64,000 bases of DNA from positions 1 through 64,000 of the IMG/VR virus record IMGVR_UViG_3300050120_000230; one strand, given 5' to 3'. Under the pieces are notes generated by a model. That model ran no database searches. It saw only the letters and a list, made by a program, of their open reading frames with translations, and was not told where the DNA came from. Positions 24,706 through 47,902 of the stretch are shown in pieces; position 1 is the first letter of the stretch, and each line of letters opens with the position of its first letter. Both the position numbers and the translations under genes were made by a program.

Positions 24706-27700
24706 TTACGAGTAGAAGGTCTCGCCTCCGAACACGCGATCCGGTCGAATATCCAGTTTGCGGCGGCCGTCGTGCACATCGCTGCCGTTCGGGTGGATGA
24801 GACCCTTGGATGTGGATAGGTAGACAGTGGCGCCAGCGGGCGGCGGGACTGCGAATGTCGCGATCAGATTCCCGTTGACCACAGTCGGCGTATAGTCGTG
24901 CTGGATCGTGCCCAGAGTATTCGTCTGACCGCTGCTGAACTTCGGAACGAGCACGCTGTAGCCGGTGTAGCCGTCGCTGCGAATCGGCTGCCCATCGGCA
25001 TAGGAGAGCGGTTCAAACACACTGACCGACAAGTCGTTGACCACCGTCTCGCCGGGCAGAGCGAATGCAGTCGCAGAACCATCGGCGGTGTAAGAAACGA
25101 GGTGACGTTGTTCCGTGCAAATGCGGGTATTATGCGTTCCGCGACGAAGCTCACTCAACACGACATTGGTGTTGCCGACGATCTCATAGGCGAAGAACTC
25201 GATGCGCTCATCGTTCAACCAGATCACACCGGGCTTGGTGATGATCCTGTGGTGATCGCTGGCGTCAAACTCGCTCAGCGTGACTGCGGAATTGGTGCTC
25301 AGTTCTTCGGCCACTGGCAGGCTGAACGGCATGACACCGAGTGTGCTCGGAACCACGGTGATGGTGTTGCTGGTCGGTGTCAGATCGCCGACCAATGTCG
25401 CATCCGGCACACCCCAAGTGACGAACTCGTAGGCGTCGCTGCGGATGACGAAGATGTCGCGGGTTTCGCTTTCGGGATCGATCCCCGTGTCGCCAACGCG
25501 ACCCACGTCATAGAGCGTGGTGTCGTGCGGCCGGGCGTCGTAGTCGCCGACTTCTTTCGGCGCCATGAGATCGGTCGAGGGCCGATTCATCGAGATGAGC
25601 CACGAGGCACGCGACAACGGTTGGCCACGGAAATTGGTGATGACGACCTTCTCTTGTCCGGTAGGCAGGGTCTTCGGAGCCGGGATGGTCGGATCGTGAT
25701 AGACGCCGTTGACGGTCATCCACACGTAGCTGAGACCGAACGGGCTATCGAAGGTGTAGAGACCATTGACGGTCGCATTCACGATGCTGGTTTCGAGGCC
25801 GAGTTGGTCCTTGTCACTGAACGTGGTTGCAGCGATCCGCGAGTTCGCGTCCACCGTTTTGGTGATGTGCAAGACACCGTTCGAGATGCTGTAGTCAGTG
25901 GTCGGGAGCAGACGCAGGCCATCGACTTCGATGATCGAAGATTCGTCTTCATCGGTGAACGGCTTGGACGGATTTGTGAGCGTCCAAATCTGCGAACCAT
26001 TGTAGGTCAACGTTTCGTTGAACACCTTCGAGCCCATCGGCTGGCCCATGACCGAGGGATTGCCTTGAGCCAGTAGGACGATGCGCGACGGTTGCGACGG
26101 CGTGTTCGCCAACGTCAGCGAATTGGCTGTGAGGGTGTAGTCGCTCGACTGAAGGAACTCACCGTTCAGCGTGATCGAGATGACGTAGGGAGTGACATCC
26201 TTCAGCAACGTGAACGTCGGGGTTCCCGTGGTGTATTCTAGGACTTCCAAATCTTCGACGGAGGTATACGAAGAGATGCCGAAAGCCTTGACGATGACTT
26301 CGTTCACTTGCACGCTATTTGCGACAAGCTGCACGGTCACTTCGTTGGTTTCCAGATTGACGGTGTAGTCAGTGCCTTCTTCAGCGCGGACACCATCGCG
26401 GAACACAGCGACCCCGTCGTTGTATTGCATCAGGATGTCGCCGAAGTAGAGAACGGCTGCCGACGTAGCGGTGTTGGACGTGTCGAACTTACGGAAAGAC
26501 TCCGGCGGGGTGCCGAGGTTGAAGTTCGTCTGCACGACCATCTTCAACGATTCGCCTGTGCCGGTGACGACCAGTTCTTGCGGTCGCCCAGCATCAAGCT
26601 CCGGGTCAGCAAAGCCGAAGTAACGTTCGTTCGGATTGATCGTCTCAACGTCTTCCGCAGCGTTGCTCAGCGGAGCGTTTCCATCGATGTCGTAGTCACG
26701 ATTGGTGTTGTCGCCGAGCGACCCACCATCCATCACGTTGCCCTTGAATTGGAGGCCCATGAGGACTTCCAAGTTCTTCTCGGCCGCCTCCGCATTTTCG
26801 GGATCGTAGAACCGCTGGATGCGATCTCCCGCGAGCCCGGAGGTGAGGTTCTGCTTGACGTTGATAGTGACGATGTCGCCATCGTTCGGCATCACGTCGA
26901 TGGTTACCGAGTCGGTGTCGGAGGTGAACTGCGCGTCGGTCAGCCGTGTAGAATTGACGAACACTTCTACGATTTCTTCACGCATGTCGATGATGCTGGG
27001 ATCGATACCCGCCATCACGAAACCAAGCGGGTTCGGACGGTCGGAGATGAATGTGAATTGTTGGCTTGCCAGCAACGGCATGTGGTCAACACGGTCGAAG
27101 TTCAGACCGATGTTCATGTGGCGAACACCGTTCCAGCCAGACGCGATGTAGAGGTCAGGATCGCTGATCGGATTCTGATAGTTGGCGAACCATTCTTTCC
27201 ACGGCGACTGCGTCGTGATGATGCTCATGTCCAGCGCGCTGGTCAGATCGAGATTGCGGTAGCGGCCGGTGGTCGGGTCCAGATAGACCGGGAAATCGAA
27301 GTCAGTGGACGACGCGTTCGCGATATCGGTTTGCGGTGTGACGAGGCGTGTAAACTCGCGCGTCTTGACGCGATAAGGCTTCACCTCATCCAGATAGTTG
27401 AGCAGGTTTTGCGTGTTGTCGATGGGCTGCACGGGCGTCTGCGTGAGCGCCTCATTGTATCCACCAACGTTCAGGAACGATGTCTTGAACGCCCACGGCA
27501 CTTGGTCCTGTTGGGCGTGCACAAAGTGCATGATGCTGAAGAAGAGTTCGTTGACTTCGAGGGGCTCCAACGCCGGTGCATCTTGCAACAAGTTGAAGAG
27601 AACTTGGAACTCCCAACTGCCGTCACGATTGCCGATCTTGGCGAGATCGTTCGCGCTGATGGGATCGAGGCCGATGGTCGGGCGAGACGGATCATCGTAG

Positions 27701-28653
27701 AACGATGAGGAGAAGGCGATGGTCCCGTTCTGCCGTGCGACCACGTTCCAAGCACCATCGGTATATGCGGTCCACACCCACGAGCCGGTGCCGTCGTCAT
27801 CGACGCGCACGAAGGTTGTCGTGGGATTGGGGTTCTCGGCGAGGTCACGGGCTTTGGCCGTGGCGTAGCGAACGACGGGCGGGTTGGTCGCGATGTAGCC
27901 GGTCGCATACCAGTCGATGTAGTCCCAAAAATCTCGCGTGCGATAGGTCTGATAGCGAAGCAGTTTGAAGCCTGCTGCATCCACGTCCGCGTCGCTGGAA
28001 ATACCGACGAACTCCCAGACGGTCCAGAAGCCAGAAGTCGTGCTCACGCCGTCCACGAGCACACGGGTGCCCACGGCAATCGGCGTAGAGCCTTGGGTCA
28101 GAAGATCGCGATCATGGAAAGACGTGACGTGGTGATCGTAGCCGGATGCGATGCTGAAAACTTCTTGCGGATTGGCGGCGATATGTTCGGGGGTCGGACC
28201 ACCGGCCGGGATGCTCGCGACGTAGACGCTCCATTGAGGGCCTTCTTGGTTTCCGAGACCGTTGACGAGAACGCTGGGATGTCCGCCAGCCAAAATCTCG
28301 GCAACGAACGCCGGATCGACCAACAGGCTGTCACGCTCTTGCAGCGAAAAAACTTGATAGTCCCACATGGTATTGGGTGGGGTGGCTTCGATCTGCGTCG
28401 TGCCCGGAGCCACGCGCCAGATGAGCGATTCTTGGACGGGAGTCTGTGCATCCATCAGGGCAACTGCCGAGGCGCGTTCGAGCGCCACCGGATTACGAGC
28501 AAAGATGATGTTGAGCATTCGCACAAAGGACGACCGCGCATCGAACAAGCCGGTGCGTGTGGAGTCCGTCACGAACATATTTTGGCCCGGCATGATACCA
28601 ACCGGGCCACCCTTGTAATATTTCGCGAGGGTGCCTGAAGAAGACTGCGTCAT
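24706..28653 (-). CDS. Large virion structural protein, probable C-terminal part of a split giant protein
   Basis: WAFKTSF, YLDEVKPYRVKTREF, PGVIWLNDERIEF..LRRGT; own TAAATA. Confidence 0.75.
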   Translation of the reverse strand: MTQSSSGTLAKYYKGGPVGIMPGQNMFVTDSTRTGLFDARSSFVRMLNIIFARNPVALERASAVALMDAQTPVQESLIWRVAPGTTQIEATPPNTMWDYQVFSLQERDSLLVDPAFVAEILAGGHPSVLVNGLGNQEGPQWSVYVASIPAGGPTPEHIAANPQEVFSIASGYDHHVTSFHDRDLLTQGSTPIAVGTRVLVDGVSTTSGFWTVWEFVGISSDADVDAAGFKLLRYQTYRTRDFWDYIDWYATGYIATNPPVVRYATAKARDLAENPNPTTTFVRVDDDGTGSWVWTAYTDGAWNVVARQNGTIAFSSSFYDDPSRPTIGLDPISANDLAKIGNRDGSWEFQVLFNLLQDAPALEPLEVNELFFSIMHFVHAQQDQVPWAFKTSFLNVGGYNEALTQTPVQPIDNTQNLLNYLDEVKPYRVKTREFTRLVTPQTDIANASSTDFDFPVYLDPTTGRYRNLDLTSALDMSIITTQSPWKEWFANYQNPISDPDLYIASGWNGVRHMNIGLNFDRVDHMPLLASQQFTFISDRPNPLGFVMAGIDPSIIDMREEIVEVFVNSTRLTDAQFTSDTDSVTIDVMPNDGDIVTINVKQNLTSGLAGDRIQRFYDPENAEAAEKNLEVLMGLQFKGNVMDGGSLGDNTNRDYDIDGNAPLSNAAEDVETINPNERYFGFADPELDAGRPQELVVTGTGESLKMVVQTNFNLGTPPESFRKFDTSNTATSAAVLYFGDILMQYNDGVAVFRDGVRAEEGTDYTVNLETNEVTVQLVANSVQVNEVIVKAFGISSYTSVEDLEVLEYTTGTPTFTLLKDVTPYVISITLNGEFLQSSDYTLTANSLTLANTPSQPSRIVLLAQGNPSVMGQPMGSKVFNETLTYNGSQIWTLTNPSKPFTDEDESSIIEVDGLRLLPTTDYSISNGVLHITKTVDANSRIAATTFSDKDQLGLETSIVNATVNGLYTFDSPFGLSYVWMTVNGVYHDPTIPAPKTLPTGQEKVVITNFRGQPLSRASWLISMNRPSTDLMAPKEVGDYDARPHDTTLYDVGRVGDTGIDPESETRDIFVIRSDAYEFVTWGVPDATLVGDLTPTSNTITVVPSTLGVMPFSLPVAEELSTNSAVTLSEFDASDHHRIITKPGVIWLNDERIEFFAYEIVGNTNVVLSELRRGTHNTRICTEQRHLVSYTADGSATAFALPGETVVNDLSVSVFEPLSYADGQPIRSDGYTGYSVLVPKFSSGQTNTLGTIQHDYTPTVVNGNLIATFAVPPPAGATVYLSTSKGLIHPNGSDVHDGRRKLDIRPDRVFGGETFYS

Positions 28654-28693
28654 GATCCTATTTATGAGCCGCCATAACTGCGGGTTTTACTCA

Positions 28694-29446
28694 TCAGTAG
28701 GAGATTTGCACGAAGCCTTGAACGCCAGAGCCGCCGACGAACCAGCTTGGGCCGGATCGATCATAAGAACCGCCACCGCCCCCGCCGGAACCATAGCCTG
28801 TGCCATCTTGGCCAGTGGTGCCGGGGCCAGCGTTGCCACCAGCGCCGCCAGCCGCACCGGCCAGAGGACCAGCGCCGCCCGGTGCACCCGGTGTGCTTGC
28901 AAAGTCGCTTGTGCCTGCCGGGCCGGTCTGTCCTGCATTGCCGTTAGGAGACCCGGAGAGGCCACCGGGAGCGGTGAGGCTGCCGTGGTTCACATTGGGG
29001 CTGCCGGAGCCTCCTTGGCCCCCAGAGGCCGTATAAACGTCGCTTCCGTGGGTGATAGTCGTGTCCCCGCCCGGATTGCCGTTTCCATCGACCGGATTGT
29101 GGTCGCTATTACCCGGAAGGTTGCCCGAACCGGGAAGGCCGATGTGAATAGTCAGCACGTCGCCGGGCGCGCAGGCGATGGGCACATTCTGTTGCCAGCC
29201 GCCGGAGCCGCCGCCGCCGCCGCCACCACCGGAACCGATCTGCGTCCCAGCGCCACCACCGGCGCCAGCACCAATCAGCCAGTCGATATTGACCGAGAAA
29301 ACACCGGGAGGAACGGTGAAGGAACCATCCGCAGTGAATTGCAGAGTGCCGGATGCAGCACTCGTCGTCGTGATAGAGAAAATTCGTTCGACGGGCGGGT
29401 TGACGCCATCCGATACCGAGACCGTAAACGAGGAGACTTGATCCAT
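28694..29446 (-). CDS. Gly-rich virion tip protein beginning with a partial Ig repeat
   Basis: FTADGSFTVPPGV..GAGAGGG Gly-rich domain; TAAATA 4 nt upstream. Confidence 0.75.
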   Translation of the reverse strand: MDQVSSFTVSVSDGVNPPVERIFSITTTSAASGTLQFTADGSFTVPPGVFSVNIDWLIGAGAGGGAGTQIGSGGGGGGGGSGGWQQNVPIACAPGDVLTIHIGLPGSGNLPGNSDHNPVDGNGNPGGDTTITHGSDVYTASGGQGGSGSPNVNHGSLTAPGGLSGSPNGNAGQTGPAGTSDFASTPGAPGGAGPLAGAAGGAGGNAGPGTTGQDGTGYGSGGGGGGSYDRSGPSWFVGGSGVQGFVQISY

Positions 29447-29453
29447 CCTCTAT

Positions 29454-32267
29454 TTACGTTTTCGTCAACGACGAGTTGAACGTATCGAGGACCGCACTAC
29501 CATCCGAGGTATTGATGACCGTGAATACAACGCTGGTGGTATGGTAACCACCGAAACGGAAGAGCACGACATCGCCGTTGACCACGTCGAAGCTTACATT
29601 AGTGCCACCTTGGATGATGCTCGCCGTTGAGAGTGTGCCGTTGATGTAAACCGCCAGATTTTCCCCGGCAGCCAACGTGCGATTACACGCAATATTCAAC
29701 GTGATGTGGGTGTTGATCCCAGTGATGCCTTGGGTGTTCGTGTTGCCACCAATGGACACGCCGGGGATGAAGCTATCGTCAGTCGGGCCGGTCGCGGAAG
29801 TGTCCGTCCAGTTCACTGGATCGGGTGTGCGGTCAAACTGGTGCGTTCCGGTAATCAGGCCGCCAGAGGTCATCGAGAAACCGGCCGGAAGAGCCGTGTT
29901 CGCAAAGAAGGTCAACGGATCGCCTTCGGGGTCGTGTGCGACCAATTGGAAGCTATTCGTATCGCCGGGGAAACCGGTCAGGGCCGGAATATCACCTGCG
30001 GGAGTGTCCCACACTGGCGGTAGATTGGCGGCTGCCGCGATGACGTTCATCTGGAACGAACGGTCAGTGGTTTTCGCACCGTCGCTCGCCGTGACCGAGA
30101 ACACAGTGTTCGTTGCGATATTCGCGATGTTGCCCGTGATGAGACCGCCGCCTGTCAGAGACAAACCGACCGGAAGCGTGGTCGAGTTGGCCAACGAATA
30201 GGTGACCGGCTTACCCTCTGGATCGTGAGCCAAGAGTTGTTGGTGAGCGGCAGTGTTGCCGACAAACGTTCCGAGCGATCCGGCGGGCGTGTCCCAAACC
30301 GGAGGAGCATCGACATGCTGAATCGTCAGATTGAAGTCACGCGATACGGTGTATTGACCATCCGACGCATTGACCGTGAAATCGTAAACCGAGAGATCGT
30401 TCTGTTGAAGAAGCGTGCCACGCATCTCGTAGATGGAGTTCGAATACGGCGGGCCATCCTTACGGCGGGTGAGATCGGAATAGGGTGGGCCACCATTGTC
30501 GAAGGCGGCGCGGTTCAAACGAATGCGGCCACGGATTGCGACGTAGGGAGAAGGGTCGGGGAGCGTGAACTCTGCGCTGATCGTATACCATTGGTTCAGC
30601 GTCCACAGCGACGTGTCGAAGAGATCGTAGCCGACATTATTCGGATCAGAGACATACCCGGCGCCGGAGCGTTGGCCTTGAATGGTGATGACGCCGTTGG
30701 CGAAGAAACAGTCGAACGCCGGGCGAACGAAACCCTTCTGTGAGTTGTCGTCTTGAGTCTTGCGAATGGAATATTTGATGACGTAGCGCGCACCCGGCAT
30801 CGGGGTGGTTTCTTGGTTGTCGGAGACGAATGTCGTCTGTGCAGCTTTCGACCGGAAAACGTGCGTGCCGTCGCTATCGACAGCCAGATAAGAAGGCCCG
30901 GCAAGGGTGGAATTAAGGCCAGTCGGATCGACGATATACCAAACTGTGTTGGCGTTCGCGATCTCTTCGTCACCAACAGAGAAAGCCTGTGGAATGCCGG
31001 TGAGCACACCGGTGTTTGAGACCGACGAAATTGACATGCCGATAACGTCAATGCCCGACAATGCGATACCGTTTGCGGACACGTTGGAGATCGAATAGGT
31101 CAACGGGTCTTGGTCTACGTCCGTCGCAATGAACGTGATCGGAGACATGGACGTGTTCTCAAGGAACAGACCGACGTTGCCTGTCGCCGGAGACTGGAAG
31201 ATCGGGGGAACGTTGACGTTCTTGACGCGCAGACTGAACGTGCGCGGAACATCGAACTCACCATCGTAGGCGAACACTTGGAACGGGAAATCTCGGTGCA
31301 TGTTGCGCGCCGATCCCACAAAGGGACTTTCCGGCACGATCTGGTCGGCGACAGGCGGAAGGCTGCCGGTCAGCACGCCGTTCGCGTTCAGGGCGAGCGT
31401 CGAGTTGGCGATCTCGCCATTGAACAGCGAACCGTTGGCGCGGAACACGAGTGGTGCATTGACTTCCGGGTTGGGGTTGAAGTCGATCTCGGGGTCGTCC
31501 ACGCCGAGGACTTTGTAGCCCACAGCATTGTTTCCCACGGCCGGGTTGCCGAACGAGTCAACGGCTTCAATCGACGTGATGCCAGAGACACGCAGCGTGC
31601 GAATATCACCGGTGGTGATGCTGTGCAGTGCAGGCGTGCCAGCCGGGGACGTGATCTTGAAATACGCCCCGCCTTCGTAGGATGCCCCGTAGTCCACCGG
31701 GCTGCTGTGAAAGGTATTGACCGAGGCAATGATATCTTGCGTCGTCTGGGCGATGGAATTGTTGAACGGAATCGTCGCGGAGATCAGGATACCGTTGGCC
31801 ACCAGCGTCGCGTTGCCGGTGGTTCCGGTGAACATCCACAGGTCGGTGACCGTCGCTTGCGCGATGTCTTGACCCTCGAACATTTCAAGGATCAGGCCAC
31901 CACTGGAAACAGACCAGACCGGCGGCAAGTTGATGTGTTTGACAGTGATCGAGAACGGCTGGTCCTTGATGTTCACACCGTCGAAGGCGCCGACGTTGAA
32001 ATACCAAGTGTGGTCGCCTTTGAGCGTTTCGCCGGTGTCGTAATGCTTGAGGTCCAGAGTTCCCGTGATCGTGCCTTCGGACGGATCAAGGAAAGCGCCA
32101 TCAGGCAGGCTGCCACTCGTCAACAGATAGGTGACATCCTGCATTTCAGGGTCACGAGCGGACAGCCGGGCGAGGAACGAATCACCTTCGTAGCAGACAC
32201 CATTGGTCATATCCGGCCGGTGCTTGCTCTGGATTTCGTTCAGTAGAGGGAAAGCATTGTCGATCAT
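29454..32267 (-). CDS. Virion protein with tandem putative Ig (He_PIG-like) repeats
   Basis: Repeated PPVW...A.DPEG.P.TY...LP.GLSL...G.ITG...F.V.ASDG..R.F units. Confidence 0.8.
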   Translation of the reverse strand: MIDNAFPLLNEIQSKHRPDMTNGVCYEGDSFLARLSARDPEMQDVTYLLTSGSLPDGAFLDPSEGTITGTLDLKHYDTGETLKGDHTWYFNVGAFDGVNIKDQPFSITVKHINLPPVWSVSSGGLILEMFEGQDIAQATVTDLWMFTGTTGNATLVANGILISATIPFNNSIAQTTQDIIASVNTFHSSPVDYGASYEGGAYFKITSPAGTPALHSITTGDIRTLRVSGITSIEAVDSFGNPAVGNNAVGYKVLGVDDPEIDFNPNPEVNAPLVFRANGSLFNGEIANSTLALNANGVLTGSLPPVADQIVPESPFVGSARNMHRDFPFQVFAYDGEFDVPRTFSLRVKNVNVPPIFQSPATGNVGLFLENTSMSPITFIATDVDQDPLTYSISNVSANGIALSGIDVIGMSISSVSNTGVLTGIPQAFSVGDEEIANANTVWYIVDPTGLNSTLAGPSYLAVDSDGTHVFRSKAAQTTFVSDNQETTPMPGARYVIKYSIRKTQDDNSQKGFVRPAFDCFFANGVITIQGQRSGAGYVSDPNNVGYDLFDTSLWTLNQWYTISAEFTLPDPSPYVAIRGRIRLNRAAFDNGGPPYSDLTRRKDGPPYSNSIYEMRGTLLQQNDLSVYDFTVNASDGQYTVSRDFNLTIQHVDAPPVWDTPAGSLGTFVGNTAAHQQLLAHDPEGKPVTYSLANSTTLPVGLSLTGGGLITGNIANIATNTVFSVTASDGAKTTDRSFQMNVIAAAANLPPVWDTPAGDIPALTGFPGDTNSFQLVAHDPEGDPLTFFANTALPAGFSMTSGGLITGTHQFDRTPDPVNWTDTSATGPTDDSFIPGVSIGGNTNTQGITGINTHITLNIACNRTLAAGENLAVYINGTLSTASIIQGGTNVSFDVVNGDVVLFRFGGYHTTSVVFTVINTSDGSAVLDTFNSSLTKT

Positions 32268-35200
32268 CGAAGACTCGGGTCAATAGGAACATCATCAGCA
32301 TCGGGGCCAGTATACCAAACCGGTGGCTTATTTACCGAGGTAACAGCCGAAGGCAGAACAAGCACAGGCGGGAGCAACATCTTCGTTTGGTCGAAACCAA
32401 CCAAACTGTCGCGCAGCTTCTCCCACAGCCATTCCGGCGGCAGGGAGCGTTCGTCTTGCGGACGAAGCAGGAGCCATTGATCGTGCACGACGCCTTCGTC
32501 ATCATCGCTGACTTCGATTTGCAGCACGGTGCCGGACGATGCAGACTCCGTGGACTCGTCAAACGTGTCGTCCAAGAACGGATTGACACCGCCGACCAGC
32601 ACACCGTTCGGCATGACCGGAGCGATCCACGGCTGATCTTCGATCATCGGATTGGTGATGAAGTTCGAAACCGTGGCGACCGACATCTGACGGCCAACGT
32701 TGGCCGGGATGTTCAGGCGGTTTTTGACCCAGAAATAGAAGTAGGTGGCGATCACACCGCCCACGGACTCTTCTGCCTCAACCCAGCTAGGATTTTCGGA
32801 GTTGTAGACAACACCGTCGATGGTGCCGGTGGTGTCCGTCAGAACAGCGGCTTCATACTCAAGCGGATGCAGAGTGGAACGCGTCCATTCGTAAACATCG
32901 ACTGACGTGCTTGGGGCGATCTGACCCCAGTGCCCGATACGGTATTGGACTTCTTGGTTGTAGCGGCTGCTGCTGGTCAGACCAAAGCTGACGTTGTCGG
33001 TTTCGGTCTCAAGGAAGCGAACCGTCTTGAGGTCCCACCACACGCGGCCGACTTGTGCCGGACCCCAAGGTCCAACAGCTTGACCGGTGGACGAGAACGA
33101 CGGCGTGCCATCTTCGTCGAAGGAACTCGGTACGACGTTATAGTTCGCCGGATCGTAGTCCACGATGTAGTCAATCTCGGCCTTTGCGCGGCCGGGAATG
33201 ATGCCGGTCAACGGCGTCACGACGGTCAGGTGGTCGAGCGACAGAGGCTCGGGTTCCAACGACGTGGTGGTGACTTTGGTCTTCAGGTTGTAGATCAGCG
33301 ACGACGCAATTCGAGCGCCATCCATGCGGGTCGGTTGTGACCGCACGACGTTCCAGAACTTGAAGGTATCCGTCCGGCGATTGTTGTCGTCGGCGATGGT
33401 GATTTGGTTGTCCGGCTGCACTTCGCCGTCTGCATAGTCGTCAAGAATTTCGGTGATCGAACCACGCTGATAGACACGCCACGGCGAGCCATCGACGTAG
33501 GCGATGTCCCCATCCAAAACGCCGACACGATTCTTGAAGGAATTGAACTCGTCGAGATTGGTGAAGTGGATCGTGCGGAGCACACGCAGCGCCGGGCCGA
33601 TCTGACCTTTGGAGACGAACTCGTAGCCCTTCTTGCCGGTGGTCAGGATGTCGATCCAGTTATCGCCGAGGTCCCAAACACGCTGCACACCTTGCAACAG
33701 AGGATCAGAGAAAGTGTCGCCGTCGATGACGATGAACAGGCCGCGATCCGTGCTGACCAACCCGTGAGGATTGACCGTGTAGATGCGAGTCGTCGTGTTC
33801 GACAACGTAATGTCTTCGGCGTTGGTCACCACGTTGGCGACGGTGTTCGTGTTGCCGTCTGCGCTGAGATTGTAGACTTTCAACGCATCCCAAACCGGAC
33901 GCTTGGAAACGACCATTTCCTGAGACATGACTTCGAAGATCGCATCGGAATACGGGGTCGTGACCAAGTCATCGGGATAGGAGCGATTGACGCGCAGACG
34001 CGAGCGAGCTTCGGTGAACGGTGGGGAGATCGGAACCGTCCATTCGCACTCGACATCATACCAACGGTCGAGCACCCAATTCGAAGTGTCGATCATATCC
34101 GTCTGCTTCGTGAAGCCGAAGCCAGACTTCGTTCCAAGCGCCGGAGCATCGGAGCCATCGGCCTTGAAGGCGTCGAACGCCGGGCGAACGAATGCCTTGA
34201 TGCCGTTAGTCTCGCGCAGAGTTTTACGCACGCTGAACGACACATTGTAGGTCTCGCCGGGAACCGGCACGAAACTATCGTCGCTGCTGATGTAGGGCGC
34301 TTCGCCAGCCGTAGATTGGAAGACCCGCGTACCATCGTCGAGGACCGTTGTTTGGTCGTTGGCGAGCGTCCGGGCGTTAGACGTTCCGTCCCAGTGGCCG
34401 GAGCCTAGAGCGATACCGAGTTCATACCAGTCGGTCGCACTGACCTGAGAGATTTCACGGCTCTCAAGATTGTTGTGAACCCACACGACTTCGCCGAGCG
34501 GCAAGGTCACGCCAGCGTTTGCATCGTAGACCGTGAGCACGTCATCGACCGAAAAGACAGTATGATCGACTTCGGTCAGACGCACATAGCCGGAGACCGG
34601 AAGATCGCCCGGCAACGGCTTTGCGTTCGGCCGCTGCGGGAAAGTGCTGAGCGGATTGTTCGGACGTTCGACCCATTTCGAATCGACGCCAGTGATCGTG
34701 CTGTCCGCCAGTTCGATCCAGTCCGGCTGTTGAGAAACGACCGGAGAGTTTGCGTCAGTGACGCGGAATTCGATGTATTGCGGATCGCGTTTGACGGTCG
34801 ATTGACCGAACAGGAATGCGACACGGTTGCGGTTTTGAATCGCACCATATTCATCGATCTTGATCGCCCACTCTTCGAAGAATTGTAGGTCGCGGCTTTG
34901 CTCGATGAAGTCGGAGCGCAGCAGCTTGTTGAAGGCGCCGGGCGCCCCCTTCTGGTGGATCAAGCCTTGGTAGAACTCGAACTGTTCCACTTCCGAAAGC
35001 ACGAGGCTGGCCAGATAGTCTCGGCTATCGTAACCGATGCTATGACGAGCGTGATCGCGTAGTGTTGCGTTGTCCGCCTTTTCGATGTCCCACATCGTCA
35101 GAAGATCAGTCGCAGCCTTGTCGAAGTTCGACTTGATGACGTTGTCGATGAGCACGTAGCCCGGAATGTCGAGGCGGCCGTTCCAGTCCATGGCGCGGTT

Positions 35201-38200
35201 GCCAATCAGACGAAGACGAGGCTGACGCAGATTGAACAGCGGCGCGTAAATGATGTCGTTGAAAATCGTCGTATTGTTGAAGATCAAGACGTGCTCGATC
35301 TCACCGATGTTCACGCGCGAACCGAACACATCGGAGTTCTTCGACAACAGCATGGCTTCACCGTCGATACGGTTAACCACGACGTTCTCACGCTTGATCG
35401 GCATACCCGCGCGATCTAGCATTCCGTAGACGCCGTTGATCGGGCTGAGAACGTCCAGAACCATACCGTGATCGGTGTTGAATTTCAGGCCACTAGCGCC
35501 GGGCGACAGGGCGATGAAGTTGCCGGGCTGCCAGTTGACCTGAGACCACGCGAGGAACTCGCGTACAGCCAAGGACCAGTCGAGCGGCTCTTGGGTGTCG
35601 GGATTGACCTGATCGAACACCCAGCCGTGGGCCACGAGGTAACGCTCGTAGCTGAGCAGGAAATCGGCAACTTGTTGGAAGGTCGCGAAGACCGTTCCGT
35701 AGGCAACTTGCTGCGTGTCGGGGCCGCCACGTCCGTAGGTGACAACGCGCGGCGCCTGTTGCGGAATGGCAGAGACCACCGACCAGAAAGTCTGATCGAA
35801 AACCGCACTGCTGGTGTGCCCCTTGATCGCCGAATAGACTGTGCTCTGGTAGGCAACGTTCGTGCCGCTCGGATAATAGGTATTCGGTCGCCATGTGTTG
35901 ATGACGGGCTCCGGCGTTGAGGCCAGACTGATGAGACCCTTCGGGCCATTTTCGAGGCCGGGGATCGTCGTGAAGAACGGTGTGCGAGTGTCGTAACCGA
36001 TCACGCGCCAGCCTTGGCCCGTCCATTCGATGACAACGCCGCTATAGACTTCTTCGCGTGTCGAAGGCGAATGATAGAGTTGCACGTCAACGTCTTCGGC
36101 CGGGAGCAGACCGAAGTTGTCGGCGAGCACGCGCAGGTTGTCAGACGTGGTGAAACCCGCCACCTTGTGGGCGAGCTTGACAGTGAGGCCACGGATAGCC
36201 GAACCGAAGTTCGACGGTGCTTGACCACGCGAAACCATGTAGTCGCTGATCCACTGCTGAACGCCTTCGGCGACGACCTTCGTGCCGGTCAGATCGAGTT
36301 CGCCATGCACGTAGATCGTGCTGTCCAAAGGACGGTTGCCGGTGGGTCCGTAAATCCATTGGCCGGTGTCGTCTTGAATCAGATTAGTGGTGTCCCAACC
36401 TTGCTCAACGAAACGAGCGGGCTTGATGAGGAAACCGATCTGAGCTTGCGCGAAGCAGAACGATTGCGACAGACGCCACAGGGCTTCCACGGGACCGATG
36501 TCTCCGGCCTGCCAAGGTGCAGTCGCCTGCTGATAGGTCGGTGCGTCGGGGATGATGCCACACTGGATGGGATCAAGCAGATTGCCTTCTTCATCGACCG
36601 GAAGAACGAGGTCGAGATCGGCGCGTGCATAACGCACATCGGTGCCAGCACGAGGTCCGCCACGGATCAAACCGTCGCGCAAATCTTCCCACAGTTTGGT
36701 GTTGCCGCTCGTGTAAGGAGCCGGGCCATATTCACCCTGCCACCACGTCGGCTTATCCACAAAGCCGAGCATCTCCCACGGCGCCACATGCGGTCGGAAG
36801 GTATCGTAGTAGAGGATGTAGATGCCGCGCCAATTACCCGGAACCGGGTTAGATTCCCGATCCACGCTGGACGAGAAATTCCATGTGAACGGGTTGGATG
36901 GATCGTAGCTATTATTCGCTCGATAATCGAGACGATTGATCTGAGCCCAGCGTTGGAAATAGGGCGAATACATCGCGTCGATTTCGGCGCTGGTATAGTT
37001 CAGATCGGTAGCCGTTACGAACTTCGTGGCCACGTAATGTTGGAGATCGAACAACGGGCGAGCTTCGGTCTTGAAGCGGGCGTTGATGTTGTCGAAAATG
37101 CGCTGTTCGAGCGCCAGCATGATCGGATCACGCATGTCGCCAAACGCGGGGACTGCACTGCCATCGTGGCCGCGAACCAACGTCACCGGTGAACTGAAAC
37201 TATTGTCCACATAGATGACCGGCTGGCTTACCGAGGCCAGACCCATTGATGCCGGGGTGGGCGGAATGAAGAACTGGCCACCAGCCATCGTGCTCCCCGA
37301 GAACGGGAAGTCACTGGTCTTGTTGAGACGCAGTTGATTGAGGATTGCGGTGACCCACAGTTCAGGAGCGTCGGTGTCCACCAACGTGCCAGCCGCACGG
37401 AAATCGAGGATCGTTTGAACGAATTTGTTGCGGAAACGTGAGTATTCTTGCTCGGCGTAGCGCAGAGAAGACGGTAGATCGTAGTTCGCATTCGCAGAGA
37501 TCAACATCGTCTTCAGGAGCGGAGAACGGTGTTGGAGAATCTTGTTGCCGTTACCCAGAACCTTGGCGGTGTCGCGCCAGTTGTTCACACTGTAGGGGTG
37601 GCCGGTGAACCCAACCTGTTGGGTCATGATCTCGCTAAAATGGTCGAACCATTCGTTGCGGCTGATCGTATCGACTTGCAGATTGCCGGGGTTGGCTTGC
37701 AGGTTCAACGGGATTTCGTAGACACCATTGACCAACGCCTGTGTGCTCGGTGTCGCCACCGGGAACCAGTTGTTGGAGAACGAGCCATTGTCGGTCTCCG
37801 ACAGGAAGTGGTGATAGTAGAAACCACTGACGGTCCCACCAACGTAAGTGACCCGATTGACGACGGGGTCGATCTCGAAGAGCGGCTGTGCAAACGAATT
37901 GACGATGATCGGGAAACCGAGCACTGCGTCCGGTGTGCCCGTGCCAATCTTGTAACCGAACAGACGGCTGCCAGCGAAGTCAGTACCTTGGTAGACGTTG
38001 TCGTCGTTGAGCGCATTCTCCGACGAATCGTAGAGCATGAACAACGGATTTGAAGCGCCAGTCTGAGCGATCTGCCATTCGATACCGTCGAACCAATATT
38101 CCACGGGATCGGTGAACACGCTGTCGGTCGGGTGACCCACGCGAATGATGTCGCCACGTACCGGCTGACCTTCGAGCACGAGTTCGATCACGTCGGCTGT

Positions 38201-39751
38201 GGCGCCGGACGGAAGCGGGGTGTCGGGGTTCGACACGACGCGATAGATGAGGTTGTTCAGCGCGGGTTCGGTCGAGTTGGATTGATGCACGAACAGGCGG
38301 TCGTTTGGTTGCAGAACATAACCATCGTCAACGACCACAGAGCCCACGATGGTGCCGTCCGGCATGTGTGCGAAGAACTGCCCGTTGACCCGCGATAGCG
38401 CGATCTTACCGGTGTCCCAGACGTTGTCGTCGTTGGGGTTCAGGTCCCAATTGTCGATGACATCGACGGTCGAGTTCGAGAGCACGCCTTGCACGTCCGC
38501 AAGACGGCGGGTGCCATAGTTGAACAGTTCGATGTTCGGAAGGAACTCGATGATCGGCCGGGTGGCGCGACGAGAGGCGAAATCTTGACCGGTCCAATCG
38601 AGAGAAGCTTCGTGGACCCAGAGGTTGCGGCGTGTCCACGGGCTATCGTCGCGCGAACGGCGGTCGATCACCACGTATTGGGGCGTAGAACCGCCTGTGT
38701 CGCCCGAGTAGTCGGGTGTTAGATTGATTGCTTGCCCAACGCCGTCGAGGATGAAAGGCCGCCCAGTGGCCACGGTAGTGCCGATTCCGTCGATCAGACG
38801 CACGCGCGAACCCGATGTCGCCATCTGGGCATTGATCGCAGGTTCCCACTTCAGGATGTCGAGCAGGAACCGCACCGATGCGGTGTGTGCGGTGACACAG
38901 GTCCAGACCATCGGGCTGCCGTGCTCATCTTCCGCGAAGGTGAGTTCGCCCACTTCGTAGGTGCGCGGCAGGTTCACATAATCGTTGCTGTCGTTGAGAC
39001 CCGGAAACACCGATTGCCATGCCAAGAACGGCGAGTAATCCAGCGTGACCAGACCGTCGAGAACGGCGGTCATATCGCCATAGCGAATGGTTTCGATGTA
39101 GTCGCCCACCGACAGGCCAGAGGTCGAGATGACCGCATCGCCGTGCGTGGTGACGTTGTTCGCGACTGGCACACCATTGACGAGGACGACCGGCACTTCA
39201 CCTTCGCCGACGAACACGGGATCGGCGGGCGGCAGAGCGTAGGCCGTGGTGGCGGCGTTGCCGTCGTAAACGTAGACCGCGCGTTCAGCGCGCAGGTTGA
39301 TGATCGAGTTCGCAGTCTCGTCGTCGGTGAGCGAACCCATCCAGACGTATTGCAGATAGTTGTTCAGCTTATCGAGATCGACCGGCGGCGCCCACGAGTA
39401 GTAGTCGCCTTCGAACATACGGCTGTGGTTGTTCACGGCCGCGCCCTGCGAACGCAGGTAGTTGATGAGATCGTCGTAGCACAGGCTGTCCGTCAGAACG
39501 CCACCTGTGTTCGACGAGATCATCGCGGGTTCAAGCTGATAGGCAGTGCGCGACGGAGACGGTTCGGCAAGGTAAAAATCCTTGTCCGGGTTGTAGTAAA
39601 CGGGCTTTTGGCCGACGTAACCACTAATCGCTTCCGACTCACCCGGCTGGAACAGTTGATCGACTGTCGCAGCAAAGAAGTTCTTCAGCGTATCCGTTTG
39701 CAGGACAGCCGGAAGCTGGGTGATTAGACGACGCTTGGGAGTCTTGGCCAT
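32264..39751 (-). CDS. Giant virion structural protein (2495 aa)
   Basis: Long clean ORF in the baseplate cluster with TAAATA 4 nt upstream; internal W.P..Y..G..V.Y CBM-like motif. Confidence 0.85.
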   Translation of the reverse strand: MAKTPKRRLITQLPAVLQTDTLKNFFAATVDQLFQPGESEAISGYVGQKPVYYNPDKDFYLAEPSPSRTAYQLEPAMISSNTGGVLTDSLCYDDLINYLRSQGAAVNNHSRMFEGDYYSWAPPVDLDKLNNYLQYVWMGSLTDDETANSIINLRAERAVYVYDGNAATTAYALPPADPVFVGEGEVPVVLVNGVPVANNVTTHGDAVISTSGLSVGDYIETIRYGDMTAVLDGLVTLDYSPFLAWQSVFPGLNDSNDYVNLPRTYEVGELTFAEDEHGSPMVWTCVTAHTASVRFLLDILKWEPAINAQMATSGSRVRLIDGIGTTVATGRPFILDGVGQAINLTPDYSGDTGGSTPQYVVIDRRSRDDSPWTRRNLWVHEASLDWTGQDFASRRATRPIIEFLPNIELFNYGTRRLADVQGVLSNSTVDVIDNWDLNPNDDNVWDTGKIALSRVNGQFFAHMPDGTIVGSVVVDDGYVLQPNDRLFVHQSNSTEPALNNLIYRVVSNPDTPLPSGATADVIELVLEGQPVRGDIIRVGHPTDSVFTDPVEYWFDGIEWQIAQTGASNPLFMLYDSSENALNDDNVYQGTDFAGSRLFGYKIGTGTPDAVLGFPIIVNSFAQPLFEIDPVVNRVTYVGGTVSGFYYHHFLSETDNGSFSNNWFPVATPSTQALVNGVYEIPLNLQANPGNLQVDTISRNEWFDHFSEIMTQQVGFTGHPYSVNNWRDTAKVLGNGNKILQHRSPLLKTMLISANANYDLPSSLRYAEQEYSRFRNKFVQTILDFRAAGTLVDTDAPELWVTAILNQLRLNKTSDFPFSGSTMAGGQFFIPPTPASMGLASVSQPVIYVDNSFSSPVTLVRGHDGSAVPAFGDMRDPIMLALEQRIFDNINARFKTEARPLFDLQHYVATKFVTATDLNYTSAEIDAMYSPYFQRWAQINRLDYRANNSYDPSNPFTWNFSSSVDRESNPVPGNWRGIYILYYDTFRPHVAPWEMLGFVDKPTWWQGEYGPAPYTSGNTKLWEDLRDGLIRGGPRAGTDVRYARADLDLVLPVDEEGNLLDPIQCGIIPDAPTYQQATAPWQAGDIGPVEALWRLSQSFCFAQAQIGFLIKPARFVEQGWDTTNLIQDDTGQWIYGPTGNRPLDSTIYVHGELDLTGTKVVAEGVQQWISDYMVSRGQAPSNFGSAIRGLTVKLAHKVAGFTTSDNLRVLADNFGLLPAEDVDVQLYHSPSTREEVYSGVVIEWTGQGWRVIGYDTRTPFFTTIPGLENGPKGLISLASTPEPVINTWRPNTYYPSGTNVAYQSTVYSAIKGHTSSAVFDQTFWSVVSAIPQQAPRVVTYGRGGPDTQQVAYGTVFATFQQVADFLLSYERYLVAHGWVFDQVNPDTQEPLDWSLAVREFLAWSQVNWQPGNFIALSPGASGLKFNTDHGMVLDVLSPINGVYGMLDRAGMPIKRENVVVNRIDGEAMLLSKNSDVFGSRVNIGEIEHVLIFNNTTIFNDIIYAPLFNLRQPRLRLIGNRAMDWNGRLDIPGYVLIDNVIKSNFDKAATDLLTMWDIEKADNATLRDHARHSIGYDSRDYLASLVLSEVEQFEFYQGLIHQKGAPGAFNKLLRSDFIEQSRDLQFFEEWAIKIDEYGAIQNRNRVAFLFGQSTVKRDPQYIEFRVTDANSPVVSQQPDWIELADSTITGVDSKWVERPNNPLSTFPQRPNAKPLPGDLPVSGYVRLTEVDHTVFSVDDVLTVYDANAGVTLPLGEVVWVHNNLESREISQVSATDWYELGIALGSGHWDGTSNARTLANDQTTVLDDGTRVFQSTAGEAPYISSDDSFVPVPGETYNVSFSVRKTLRETNGIKAFVRPAFDAFKADGSDAPALGTKSGFGFTKQTDMIDTSNWVLDRWYDVECEWTVPISPPFTEARSRLRVNRSYPDDLVTTPYSDAIFEVMSQEMVVSKRPVWDALKVYNLSADGNTNTVANVVTNAEDITLSNTTTRIYTVNPHGLVSTDRGLFIVIDGDTFSDPLLQGVQRVWDLGDNWIDILTTGKKGYEFVSKGQIGPALRVLRTIHFTNLDEFNSFKNRVGVLDGDIAYVDGSPWRVYQRGSITEILDDYADGEVQPDNQITIADDNNRRTDTFKFWNVVRSQPTRMDGARIASSLIYNLKTKVTTTSLEPEPLSLDHLTVVTPLTGIIPGRAKAEIDYIVDYDPANYNVVPSSFDEDGTPSFSSTGQAVGPWGPAQVGRVWWDLKTVRFLETETDNVSFGLTSSSRYNQEVQYRIGHWGQIAPSTSVDVYEWTRSTLHPLEYEAAVLTDTTGTIDGVVYNSENPSWVEAEESVGGVIATYFYFWVKNRLNIPANVGRQMSVATVSNFITNPMIEDQPWIAPVMPNGVLVGGVNPFLDDTFDESTESASSGTVLQIEVSDDDEGVVHDQWLLLRPQDERSLPPEWLWEKLRDSLVGFDQTKMLLPPVLVLPSAVTSVNKPPVWYTGPDADDVPIDPSLR

Positions 39752-41084: not shown

Positions 41085-41843
41085 TCAGCGGATACGGAGG
41101 TTTGTCGCCGTGTTCGAGAGGATGATGTTCACGTCCGTGACTTGTGCCGTGGAAATGAAAATCTCATCCGAGCGTGACCGGACTTCGAATCCGTCACCGA
41201 AATTGGAATCGCCGAACGTCGGCACTACAACGACTGAGGCCACGATGTTCGCAAGCTGCTGGTGAATGTAGGCGGCCAGTTCTGTGTAATAAAAAGTCTC
41301 GCCAAAATCCCAGTTTTTCACGTCGAAATAGTTGTTCACGGCACGAATGACTTGGCTGCTGATTTCACCATCGCTGAGCGTCGAGTTCGCGACCTTGACG
41401 ACCTTGAACTTGGCCTTCAGTTGGTCGTCCGCTCCGTTGCCGAACAGGAACTTGTATTTCGCAGGGCGCCAGACGATCTGATCGCTGAACATGCGGAACT
41501 CTTCGAACTGTTCGAAAGCTAGACGAAGGTCCAGTTCGGTCGGGGGAGTCGGCAGGTTGGCAGGATCAGCGCCGCTCTTGATCCACAGGCGGGTGAGATA
41601 GTCGTATTCGGACGTGAGGACGAAGAGATCATGCACGTTGGTCCGCGCCGGGTCGATGCGTTCATCGTTTGAAGCGTAGTGCTTCCACTGGAACTTGAGC
41701 GGAGGCACAGAGGTAGGAGACGTGGTTTCAACGCCGTCAGCCGGGGACGTTCCGGTGACTTTCAGACGATAATACCGGCCGTTGCTGGTCACGATGGTGC
41801 CAACCGGAGAGTATTGCGATGCGGGAGTCCAAGCAGCGACCAT
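41085..41843 (-). CDS. Baseplate wedge (gp6-like) C-terminal fragment
   Basis: LKFQWKHY..RIDP, WDFGETFYYTELAAYIH, DEIFISTA. Confidence 0.7.
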   Translation of the reverse strand: MVAAWTPASQYSPVGTIVTSNGRYYRLKVTGTSPADGVETTSPTSVPPLKFQWKHYASNDERIDPARTNVHDLFVLTSEYDYLTRLWIKSGADPANLPTPPTELDLRLAFEQFEEFRMFSDQIVWRPAKYKFLFGNGADDQLKAKFKVVKVANSTLSDGEISSQVIRAVNNYFDVKNWDFGETFYYTELAAYIHQQLANIVASVVVVPTFGDSNFGDGFEVRSRSDEIFISTAQVTDVNIILSNTATNLRIR

Positions 41844-41850
41844 GAATGCC

Positions 41851-47880: not shown

Positions 47881-47902
47881 GAGGATATTTATCCGCGACG
47901 GG

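What the first reader, a model, noticed from the sequence alone, without database searches (positions are those of the whole stretch)
28694..32340. Ig repeats cut across gene boundaries: candidate strand-complementation chain
Seen: intact repeats run PPVW...A.DP...TY...LP.G..L...G.ITG...F.V.ASDG...R.F. The 2495-aa protein ends with an orphan VNKPPVWYTG, and the 937-aa protein starts with a repeat lacking PPVW (RLSARDPEMQDVTY..SLPDG..GTITG). The last repeat of the 937-aa protein stops after GGLITGTHQ (~29840) and runs into another domain. The missing strands, SSFTVSVSDGVNPPVERIFSIT, begin the next, separately promoted 250-aa Gly-rich protein. Established: chaperone-usher pili polymerise by donor-strand complementation of incomplete Ig folds. 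Inference: three polypeptides lock into a branched appendage the same way; recoding into fused isoforms is the alternative.
Basis: partly seen in the sequence, partly recalled or inferred. Interest (0 to 1): 0.75.

Follow-up and report, generated by a model that had tools for sequence, protein, structure and literature searches.

The report
Phage tail protein split inside Ig domains
In a giant soil phage, one very long tail-baseplate fibre protein has been cut into three genes at points that lie inside small Ig-like domains, and the pieces most likely snap back together by lending each other the missing beta-strands, which shows how phages can build branched fibres from one ancestral chain.

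Summary
A profile built from 22 intact repeats of relatives places P0002 residues 750-810 on positions 1-60 and P0003 residues 2-30 on positions 65-92. The P0001 tail PPVWYTG fits positions 1-7, and the first P0002 domain fits 13-93.

Relatives carry the same parts as one chain or as two:
- One chain of 3110-3418 aa.
- Two chains, giant plus a 1006-1084 aa fibre ending in the Gly-rich domain.

Junction 1 (after strand A) is old and widespread. 19 of 25 motif-bearing giants end there, nearly all with a P-V/I-W/F tail.

Junction 2 is seen only in this genome. A 127-residue beta-sandwich, a stop, 7 nt and an ATG sit in the loop before the last two strands. The nearest relative is unsplit.

A complex prediction puts P0003 residues 4-30 onto P0002 748-812. 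Score 0.77, best control 0.02; the mark was reached by 51 of 78 solved complexes and 2 of 108 mismatched pairs.

Recoding, an intron, a frameshift error and misassembly are rejected.

Strand complementation is the best reading but is not proven. It is not a chaperone-usher system. This is a new variant of a known principle.

The parts
32264..39751 (-). P0001, 2495-aa giant baseplate structural protein (phrog_10938)
   Evidence: 47% identical over about 2500 aa to the first 2500 aa of the fused 3418-aa relative P0032.
32267..32335 (-). C-terminal tail of P0001: VNK, then PPVW (strand A of the next domain), then a 16-residue acidic and proline-rich end. The VNK codons GTA AAT AAG hold a TAAATA motif 62 nt before the P0002 start.
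   Evidence: The tail motif is conserved in 5 close and more than 10 distant split lineages, with synonymous codon changes. GTAAATAAR is invariant in the 5 close ones and absent from the fused relatives.
29454..32267 (-). P0002, 937-aa fibre protein with He_PIG (cadherin-like Ig) repeats
   Evidence: Relatives of 1006-1084 aa carry He_PIG and Gly_rich_2 in one chain.
31929..32198 (-). First Ig domain of P0002 (residues 24-113), lacking strand A
   Evidence: Fits profile positions 13-93 only. The AF2 model has 7 strands between 24 and 110, and residues 1-22 are of low confidence. Cadherin EC domains are the best PDB matches.
29838..30020 (-). Truncated last Ig domain of P0002 (residues 750-810: strands A to E, ending GGLITGTHQ)
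   Evidence: Fits profile positions 1-60. Residues 748-812 form the predicted interface with P0003.
29457..29837 (-). Inserted 127-residue 'TPDP' beta-sandwich domain (P0002 811-937), followed by TAA
   Evidence: Absent from the unsplit relatives. 57-66% identical to three tandem copies at the end of the L009 giant. The model is an 8-strand sandwich. No PDB family by fold or by sequence.
29447..29456 (-). TAA stop of P0002 overlapping a TAAATA motif, then GAGG, directly before the P0003 ATG
28694..29446 (-). P0003, 250 aa: an orphan half-Ig followed by a Gly_rich_2 domain
   Evidence: No other stand-alone protein of this kind appeared among the 150 listed of 248 hits from 1.84 billion representatives.
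29357..29443 (-). Residues 2-30 of P0003: the last two strands (F and G) of the Ig domain begun in P0002
   Evidence: Fits profile positions 65-92. Residues 4-30 form the predicted interface.
24706..28653 (-). P0004, 1315-aa next baseplate protein. Its homologues in L003 and L008 carry Baseplate_J.
41085..45582 (-). Second split in the same module: the baseplate wedge protein (DUF8360, phrog_10646) as P0165 (1243 aa) plus P0166 (252 aa), with a He_PIG array and a stop inserted

Best explanation
The window belongs to a 415-kb jumbo phage from peat. P0001, P0002 and P0003 are three pieces of a giant baseplate-fibre protein that some relatives make as one chain.

Cut 1 lies just after strand A (PPVW) of the first cadherin-like Ig domain. 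It is an old and widespread gene boundary. The C-terminal tail of the giant most likely lays its Trp-bearing strand A onto the strand-A-less first domain of the fibre, and so docks the fibre on the baseplate.

Cut 2 is seen only in this genome. A cassette made of a 127-residue beta-sandwich, a stop, a promoter-like and ribosome-binding stretch and an ATG landed in the loop before the last two strands of the last Ig domain. P0002 therefore ends in a new tip domain. P0003 carries strands F and G at its N-terminus, and these most likely re-form the Ig domain in trans. That tethers the Gly-rich distal domain and gives a two-headed fibre end. Tight stop-start spacing (ATGA overlap; 7 nt) would favour production of the partners together.

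Shown: the gene anatomy, the homology to fused forms, the conservation of the tail, and compatibility of the junction-2 halves in a controlled model. Inferred: that the pieces really bind in the virion, and the direction of evolution at junction 1.
For: Complementary halves:
- The profile coordinates of the pieces complement each other at both junctions.

Fused and unsplit relatives:
- P0032, P0043 and P0048 hold giant, intact first Ig, Ig array and Gly-rich domain in one chain.
- Two-gene relatives have the last Ig intact and continuous with the Gly-rich domain.
- The nearest relative (L007 lineage, 74% identical in the giant) is unsplit at junction 2.

Junction 1:
- The tail motif VNK[AP]PVW[YF]..P..D..PI[DN]P is conserved while the linker before it varies.
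- Synonymous codon changes within the motif point to constraint on the protein.
- 19 of 25 motif-bearing giants end 15-55 aa after the W.W..VGF motif, nearly all with a P-V/I-W/F strand.
- In a distant subgroup (L017) the next gene also starts with an Ig that has no strand A.
- The AF2 model of P0002 1-125 has no confident strand A of its own.

Junction 2:
- Complex prediction: score 0.77, best of 3 controls 0.02. The mark was reached by 51 of 78 solved complexes and 2 of 108 mismatched pairs.
- The interface is chain 1 residues 748-812 and chain 2 residues 4-30.

Other support:
- A second baseplate protein in the same module (by analogy with T4 wedge proteins presumably essential) is split in the same style, and that split has persisted in two lineages.
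- The sequence is confirmed by an independent contig.
Against: - There is no experimental or transcript or protein evidence.
- Junction 2 is a singleton. Conservation cannot show that the orphan strands still matter, because a recent insertion would leave them looking intact whether or not they function.
- The complex model may simply rebuild a familiar Ig fold from two chains.
- Junction 1 was never modelled as a complex.
- In L009 the fibre homologue P0010 has the same strand-A-less first domain, yet the giant before it ends in TPDP domains without a PPVW tail. A donated strand A is therefore not universal.
- Part of the tail conservation (VNK) is explained by a DNA motif rather than by the protein.
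- The tree nests fused forms among split forms, so fission versus fusion at junction 1 is unresolved.
Confidence: 0.6

Rival explanations
1. Junction 2 is a recent, neutral or damaging insertion. The half-Ig at the start of P0003 is a relic that no longer binds. P0003 is either not incorporated or is attached through its Gly-rich domain. The truncated P0002 domain acts only as a floppy linker to the new tip.
For: The split was found in no other genome. No stand-alone P0003-like protein appeared among the 150 listed hits, and no other P0002 with the insert turned up. The nearest relative is unsplit. The GC and GC3 of the insert match the gene, so its age is unknown.
Against: Both ORFs are intact. 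The start lies exactly at the half-domain, with stop-start coupling and a TAAATA motif. The Gly-rich domain ends this fibre in every complete relative examined, fused or two-gene, so it is probably needed. The controlled complex model places the halves together. A comparable split of the wedge protein has persisted in two lineages.
Confidence: 0.25
2. The conservation of the P0001 tail reflects signals in the DNA or RNA for expression of P0002 (a late promoter, translational coupling). The fibre docks through other surfaces, not through a donated strand A.
For: GTA AAT AAR (TAAATA) is invariant in the five close split lineages, although it uses codons that look atypical for this GC-rich genome (codon usage was not tabulated). 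It is absent from the fused relatives. TAAATA precedes many late-type genes. L009 lacks a PPVW tail.
Against: PVW, P, D and PI[DN]P are kept through synonymous codon changes. Distant lineages without VNK or TAAATA still keep a P-V/I-W/F strand in the tail. The fused forms show the same strand as part of the same domain.
Confidence: 0.2
3. Fused isoforms are made by recoding (frameshift, readthrough, hopping) or by RNA splicing across the junctions.
For: The stop and start are very close at both junctions. In L008 the two genes are in frame, separated by TAA GTG.
Against: Junction 2:
- TAA in the P0002 frame (29456-29454) and TAG in the P0003 frame (29452-29450) close both frames, so no single event can fuse them.
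- Removing the insert would need a 394-nt splice. There is no Rfam match and no unusual RNA fold (z = -0.46).
- The insert encodes a conserved protein domain.

Junction 1:
- Only 13 nt are open in both frames, and they hold no slippery heptamer.
- The frame relation differs among relatives: -1, +1 and 0.
Confidence: 0.03
4. A sequencing or assembly artefact (an indel or a chimeric join) creates false gene boundaries.
For: Such cases do exist. In L015 a one-base frameshift breaks an Ig-repeat gene.
Against: Junction 2 is a 127-codon in-frame domain with homologues in L009, not an indel. Junction 1 recurs in many independent assemblies. A Logan contig is identical over 3.8 kb at depth 19.3, with no variants.
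Confidence: 0.02

Closest known systems
Unsplit homologues of the same protein in other jumbo phages (P0032 3418 aa, P0043 3369 aa, P0048 3110 aa; two-gene forms in L002, L003, L007, L008)
   Same: Same giant body (47-74% identity), the same first Ig domain, the same Ig array and Gly_rich_2 end, and the same baseplate synteny (gp25-like, wedge, giant, fibre, Baseplate_J-type).
   Different: The window has one more chain break, inside the last Ig domain, and an extra TPDP domain. The fused forms have no break at all.
Chaperone-usher pilus donor-strand complementation and exchange (own knowledge)
   Same: An incomplete Ig-like fold that lacks its C-terminal strand(s) is completed by the N-terminal extension of the next subunit. 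That is the topology of junction 2.
   Different: There is no PapD-like chaperone or usher and no repeated self-polymerisation. Two strands are missing, not one. Assembly is cytoplasmic. The halves descend from one ordinary domain. Junction 1 has the reverse polarity: a C-terminal tail donates the N-terminal strand A.
Classical cadherin EC1 strand-swap binding through the Trp2-bearing A strand (own knowledge)
   Same: The domains are cadherin-like by fold. The donated element at junction 1 is an A strand with a conserved Trp (PPVW).
   Different: Cadherins swap A strands reciprocally between two complete domains. Here the acceptor has no A strand of its own and the donor is a tail on another protein. 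No calcium sites were examined.
Structural or enzyme genes of T4-like phages split by inserted DNA whose products reassemble, for example T4 topoisomerase gp39/gp60 and the Aeromonas phage Aeh1 NrdA split by mobE (own knowledge)
   Same: An insertion with a stop and a restart splits a gene, and the fragments are thought to, or are known to, reassemble into a working protein.
   Different: The insert here is a surface beta-sandwich domain fused to the upstream fragment, not a homing endonuclease gene or a bypass element. The cut lies inside a small Ig domain.
Engineered split Ig-like domains (SpyTag/SpyCatcher from CnaB2, split FN3) (own knowledge)
   Same: A short strand-bearing peptide completes a truncated beta-sandwich on another chain.
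   Different: This case is natural, non-covalent as far as can be told, and involves two strands. Affinity is unknown.

Membership tests
He_PIG (PF05345), dystroglycan or cadherin-like Ig domain | Match to the family model above the gathering score | tested here: met
   P0002 scores 62.2 bits against a cut-off of 24. The fold of domain 1 is nearest to cadherin EC domains.
He_PIG (PF05345), dystroglycan or cadherin-like Ig domain | One domain is one contiguous stretch of about 94 residues on one chain | tested here: not met
   The last domain is positions 1-60 on P0002 and 65-92 on P0003. The first domain is positions 1-7 on P0001 and 13-93 on P0002.
Gly_rich_2 (PF21722) | Match above the gathering score | tested here: met
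   P0003 residues 39-250 score 31.4 bits against a cut-off of 24.3. The match is seen again.
Chaperone-usher donor-strand system | A subunit with an Ig fold that lacks its C-terminal strand, completed by the N-terminal extension of the next subunit | tested here: inconclusive
   The topology is met at junction 2 in sequence and in a controlled model (0.77 against 0.02; 51 of 78 solved complexes and 2 of 108 mismatched pairs reached the mark). There is no physical evidence.
Chaperone-usher donor-strand system | A PapD-like periplasmic chaperone and an outer-membrane usher | tested here: not met
   PF00345 and PF00577 have no match in the 415-kb record, while the control genomes gave hits. The record is estimated to be 72% complete.
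Chaperone-usher donor-strand system | Head-to-tail polymerisation of like subunits | tested here: not met
   The three proteins are unlike each other, each gene is present once, and the pieces correspond to one ancestral chain.
Programmed frameshift or readthrough | An overlap open in both frames with a slippery site, conserved among relatives | tested here: not met
   At junction 2 both frames are closed. At junction 1 the 13-nt overlap has no slippery heptamer, and the frame relation varies among relatives.
Self-splicing intron or intein | A structured RNA of a known intron family, or an in-frame intein without a stop | tested here: not met
   No Rfam match at E <= 1. The RNA fold has z = -0.46. 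The insert ends in TAA and encodes a domain 57-66% identical to domains in L009.
Jumbo-phage giant baseplate protein (phrog_10938) | Match to the family profile and baseplate synteny | tested here: met
   P0001 scores 1258 bits. Its neighbours are gp25-like, a wedge subunit and GP38-like proteins. The synteny is the same in relatives.

The most novel reading that the evidence does not exclude
Jumbo phages of this group use Ig-strand 'tag and socket' pairs as a general way to build and remodel their baseplate fibres. Display cassettes (Ig arrays or TPDP domains that end in a stop plus a restart) insert into surface loops of structural proteins. They leave nicked proteins that re-form by strand complementation, and so add branches without loss of function. 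The conserved PPVW tail of the giant would be a natural, portable docking peptide for strand-A-less cadherin-like domains.
Probability: 0.3. Interest if true: 0.75.

Novelty: new variant of a known kind. Interest (0 to 1): 0.6.

Why it matters
If the pieces do reassemble, three things follow.

- This would be a natural case of protein-fragment complementation inside a roughly 94-residue Ig-like domain, and it arose twice in one fibre. It would explain how giant phage baseplate proteins can be broken into modules and branched without losing attachment.
- It would give a concrete, testable docking rule for a large group of uncultured jumbo phages: the PPVW tail onto a strand-A-less domain.
- It would offer small natural strand-and-domain pairs that could be tried as non-covalent coupling tags.

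It also warns annotators that an Ig repeat cut by a gene boundary is not always an error.

Tried and rejected
- **Near relatives in GenBank phages.** The DNA and P0002 found nothing. Only distant hits to Rak2-, PA5oct- and 121Q-type jumbo phages came up for the giant.
- **Collection scans with P0002 or its N-terminus.** The viral contigs and metagenome scans gave only the L007-lineage contig. One alignment was too diverse to search with.
- **The TPDP domain.**
  - No other copy in the own genome.
  - No homologue among proteins of 515-1640 aa.
  - No PDB relative by sequence.
  - Only weak, generic beta-sandwich fold matches.
  - No family is assigned.
- **Flanking repeats.** There are no direct repeats at the insertion borders, so the insertion mechanism is unknown.
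- **Sigma-70 promoter and terminator scan.** Not above the shuffled expectation.
- **P0040 and P0021 as further genes that start inside an Ig domain.** P0040 is a one-base frameshift and P0021 is cut by a contig end. Both were dropped.
- **Polarity at junction 1.** A 9-row tree suggested a single fission. The 25-row tree nests fused forms among split ones, so I withdrew that claim.
- **Loci in held genomes.** The genome search on the relatives' loci showed that they are not held.
- **Structure prediction.** It was unavailable twice before it ran.
- **Model of P0002 1-125.** It neither shows nor excludes an own strand A, because residues 1-22 have low confidence.
Full report
**What is there**

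The window is the first 64 kb of a 415-kb IMG/VR virus record. CheckV estimates it to be 72% complete. One peat metagenome run holds it.

Four large genes lie head to tail on the minus strand:

| Protein | Coordinates | Length |
|---|---|---|
| P0001 | 32264-39751 | 2495 aa |
| P0002 | 29454-32267 | 937 aa |
| P0003 | 28694-29446 | 250 aa |
| P0004 | 24706-28653 | 1315 aa |

- P0001 belongs to phrog_10938, the giant virion structural protein of Rak2-, PA5oct- and 121Q-type jumbo phages.
- P0002 carries He_PIG domains and P0003 carries a Gly_rich_2 domain.
- The neighbours form a baseplate module:
  - a gp25-like protein;
  - a wedge subunit;
  - a fibre with an S74 chaperone domain;
  - a GP38-like adhesin.

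To test it against chance, I built a 94-position profile from 22 intact repeats taken only from relatives.

| Piece | Profile positions | E-value |
|---|---|---|
| P0002 750-810 | 1-60 | 2e-18 |
| P0003 2-30 | 65-92 | 3.6e-5 |
| P0002 24-113 | 13-93 | 3e-19 |
| P0001 tail PPVWYTG | 1-7 | not significant alone |

Each junction therefore divides one domain into two complementary parts.

An independently built Logan contig is identical over 28600-32400 at depth 19.3. It may derive from the same sample.

**Relatives show what the pieces were**

A word-indexed search with P0002 found fibre proteins of 1006-1084 aa. They hold He_PIG and Gly_rich_2 in one chain. In them the last Ig domain runs without a break into the Gly-rich domain.

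Their loci have a giant of about 2520-2545 aa, then this fibre, and further downstream a P0004 homologue. The P0004 homologue directly follows the fibre in L002. In L003 and L008 several small genes lie between.

An exhaustive phmmer search with P0003 returned 248 hits. Among the 150 listed, the first residues of P0003 always align to the interior of longer proteins.

Three hits are 3110-3418 aa. P0032 is 47% identical to P0001 over about 2500 aa. It then continues into the P0002-type first domain, an Ig array and the Gly-rich end. In P0043 and P0048 the first domain is intact and contiguous, with PPVW followed by about 18 residues and then the strand-B motif.

The three window proteins are therefore pieces of what can be one chain.

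**Junction 1**

*Tail conservation.* The window and four close split relatives share the motif VNK[AP]PVW[YF]..P..D..PI[DN]P. The 19-residue linker before it varies freely. The codons of PVW, Y, P and PI[DN]P differ synonymously among lineages, which points to constraint on the protein.

*A DNA motif inside the tail.* VNK is always GTA AAT AAR, which is a TAAATA motif. The fused relatives lack it. The same motif sits 4-6 nt before the ATG of P0001, P0003, P0004 and five other long ORFs in the window. It also sits before the giant and the P0004 homologue in every relative locus. It is probably a T4-like late promoter element. That reading is an inference from the T4 consensus TATAAATA, which I know from memory. 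So part of the tail is conserved as DNA and the rest as protein.

*A wider sample.* Of the 120 best homologues of the P0001 C-terminus, 25 carry the W.W..VGF motif.
- 19 of them end 15-55 residues after it.
- Nearly all of those 19 have a P-V/I-W/F strand in the tail.

In a distant subgroup (L017) the next gene overlaps the stop, and it again begins with an Ig domain that has no strand A.

*Polarity.* A 25-row tree nests the fused forms among the split ones, so I cannot say whether fission or fusion came first. Either way, the boundary after strand A is long-lived.

*Structure.* The AF2 model of P0002 1-125 has seven strands between residues 24 and 110. It has no confident strand A of its own. 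Its best PDB matches are cadherin EC domains.

*Counter-evidence.* In L009 the fibre homologue P0010 has the same strand-A-less first domain. The giant before it ends in three TPDP domains and has no PPVW tail.

**Junction 2**

The nearest relative (L007 lineage, 74% identical in the giant) has an unsplit fibre.

In the window, a 127-residue domain (P0002 811-937) follows GGLITGTHQ. Then come TAA, 7 nt and the ATG of P0003.

This domain is 57-66% identical to three tandem copies that end the 3275-aa giant of L009. Those copies are likewise followed by a stop, TAAATA and the next start.

It models as an 8-strand beta-sandwich and could not be assigned to a family. Its GC and GC3 match the rest of the gene. 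No direct repeats flank it.

How it got there is unknown. Functionally it amounts to a domain inserted in the loop before the last two strands, together with a break in the chain.

**Do the halves bind?**

- Score 0.77; best of 3 controls 0.02.
- The mark was reached by 51 of 78 solved complexes and 2 of 108 mismatched pairs.
- Confident contacts are residues 748-812 of P0002 and 4-30 of P0003, which are exactly the two half-domains.

This supports compatibility. It does not show binding, because the model may simply rebuild a familiar fold.

**Alternatives**

*Recoding.*
- At junction 2, TAA in the P0002 frame and TAG in the P0003 frame close both frames.
- At junction 1, only 13 nt are open in both frames and they hold no slippery site. 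The frame relation differs among relatives: ATGA, TAATG, and in frame with TAA GTG ATG.

*Splicing.* There is no Rfam match and no unusual RNA fold. The insert is a conserved protein domain.

*Artefact.* This is excluded as described above. A true frameshift case (L015) looks quite different.

*Relic.* The reading that the P0003 strands no longer bind cannot be excluded, because the split is a singleton.

**A parallel case in the same module**

The wedge protein (DUF8360, phrog_10646) is a single ORF of 1091-1207 aa in seven relatives, and 1111 aa in L011.

In the window it is split into P0165 (1243 aa) and P0166 (252 aa). A He_PIG array, a stop and 7 nt are inserted between them.

The same split, with both ORFs intact, is present in L020. 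There P0166 is 87% identical and the inserted array 64% identical. A chain break with a display insert has therefore persisted in a baseplate protein that, by analogy with T4 wedge proteins, is presumably essential. This makes a working split at junction 2 more credible.

**Comparison with known systems**

The junction-2 topology is an Ig fold that lacks its C-terminal strands and is completed by the N-terminus of the next protein. It resembles chaperone-usher donor-strand complementation. There is, however, no chaperone, no usher and no polymerisation.

Junction 1 is a Trp-bearing A strand given to a cadherin-like domain. It resembles cadherin strand swapping, but it is one-way. Phage genes split by insertions whose products reassemble are known from T4-like phages (own knowledge).

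I rate this a new variant of a known principle. The confidence figures are:

| Claim | Confidence |
|---|---|
| The gene anatomy and the homology to fused forms | about 0.95 |
| Strand complementation holds the three proteins together | about 0.6 |

Noticed in passing
window 41085-45582 (-): The baseplate wedge protein (DUF8360, phrog_10646) is split into a 1243-aa and a 252-aa ORF. About 346 residues of He_PIG repeats, a stop and 7 nt are inserted, and the second ORF has a new CBM_5_12-like N-terminus. The protein is unsplit in L011 and L021-L027. The same split is present in L020.
   Followed up: partly
window, e.g. 39761, 29456, 28664, 49998, 47891, 17719 (-); 15968, 54764 (+): TAAATA followed by 4-6 nt and ATG precedes eight long ORFs of 164 aa or more (plus one 15-aa ORF, nine of the window's 20 TAAATA sites in all). 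It also precedes the giant and P0004 homologues in all relatives' loci. It looks like a T4-type late promoter placed so close to the start that the transcripts would be nearly leaderless.
   Followed up: partly
window 32327-32335 (-): The VNK codons before PPVW read GTAAATAAG. This DNA motif is invariant in five split lineages and absent from fused relatives, which suggests an internal promoter for P0002 inside the P0001 coding sequence.
   Followed up: partly
P0002 residues about 440-640 (window about 30350-30950) and P0001 residues about 1750-1950: A module of about 200 residues (..VFRSKA.. / ..VRPAFD.. / ..PYS..I[YF]EM) occurs both in the giant and in the fibre. It was seen in the P0032 against P0002 alignment and by eye in P0001.
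   Followed up: no
P0001 and P0004 (window 24706-39751): phrog_10938 (3324 positions) is matched by P0001 at positions 598-2090 and by P0004 at 2226-2479. In some phages these two proteins may also be one chain.
   Followed up: no
L009 7820-8983: Three tandem TPDP domains end a 3275-aa giant. The next gene starts after TGA and TAAATA. This is the only other place where the inserted domain was found.
   Followed up: partly
L015 5930-6060: An Ig-repeat plus Gly-rich gene is broken by a one-base frameshift inside a repeat (377-aa and 624-aa ORFs overlapping by 58 nt). It is either an assembly error or a pseudogene.
   Followed up: partly
G000:C1:131537-132178 (-), outside the window: A second Gly_rich_2 gene (open frame of 293 aa) lies elsewhere in the same phage genome.
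   Followed up: no
window 46576-49987 (-): A 694-aa He_PIG protein and a 434-aa fibre with a C-terminal Peptidase_S74 (intramolecular chaperone) domain lie upstream of the gp25-like gene.
   Followed up: no
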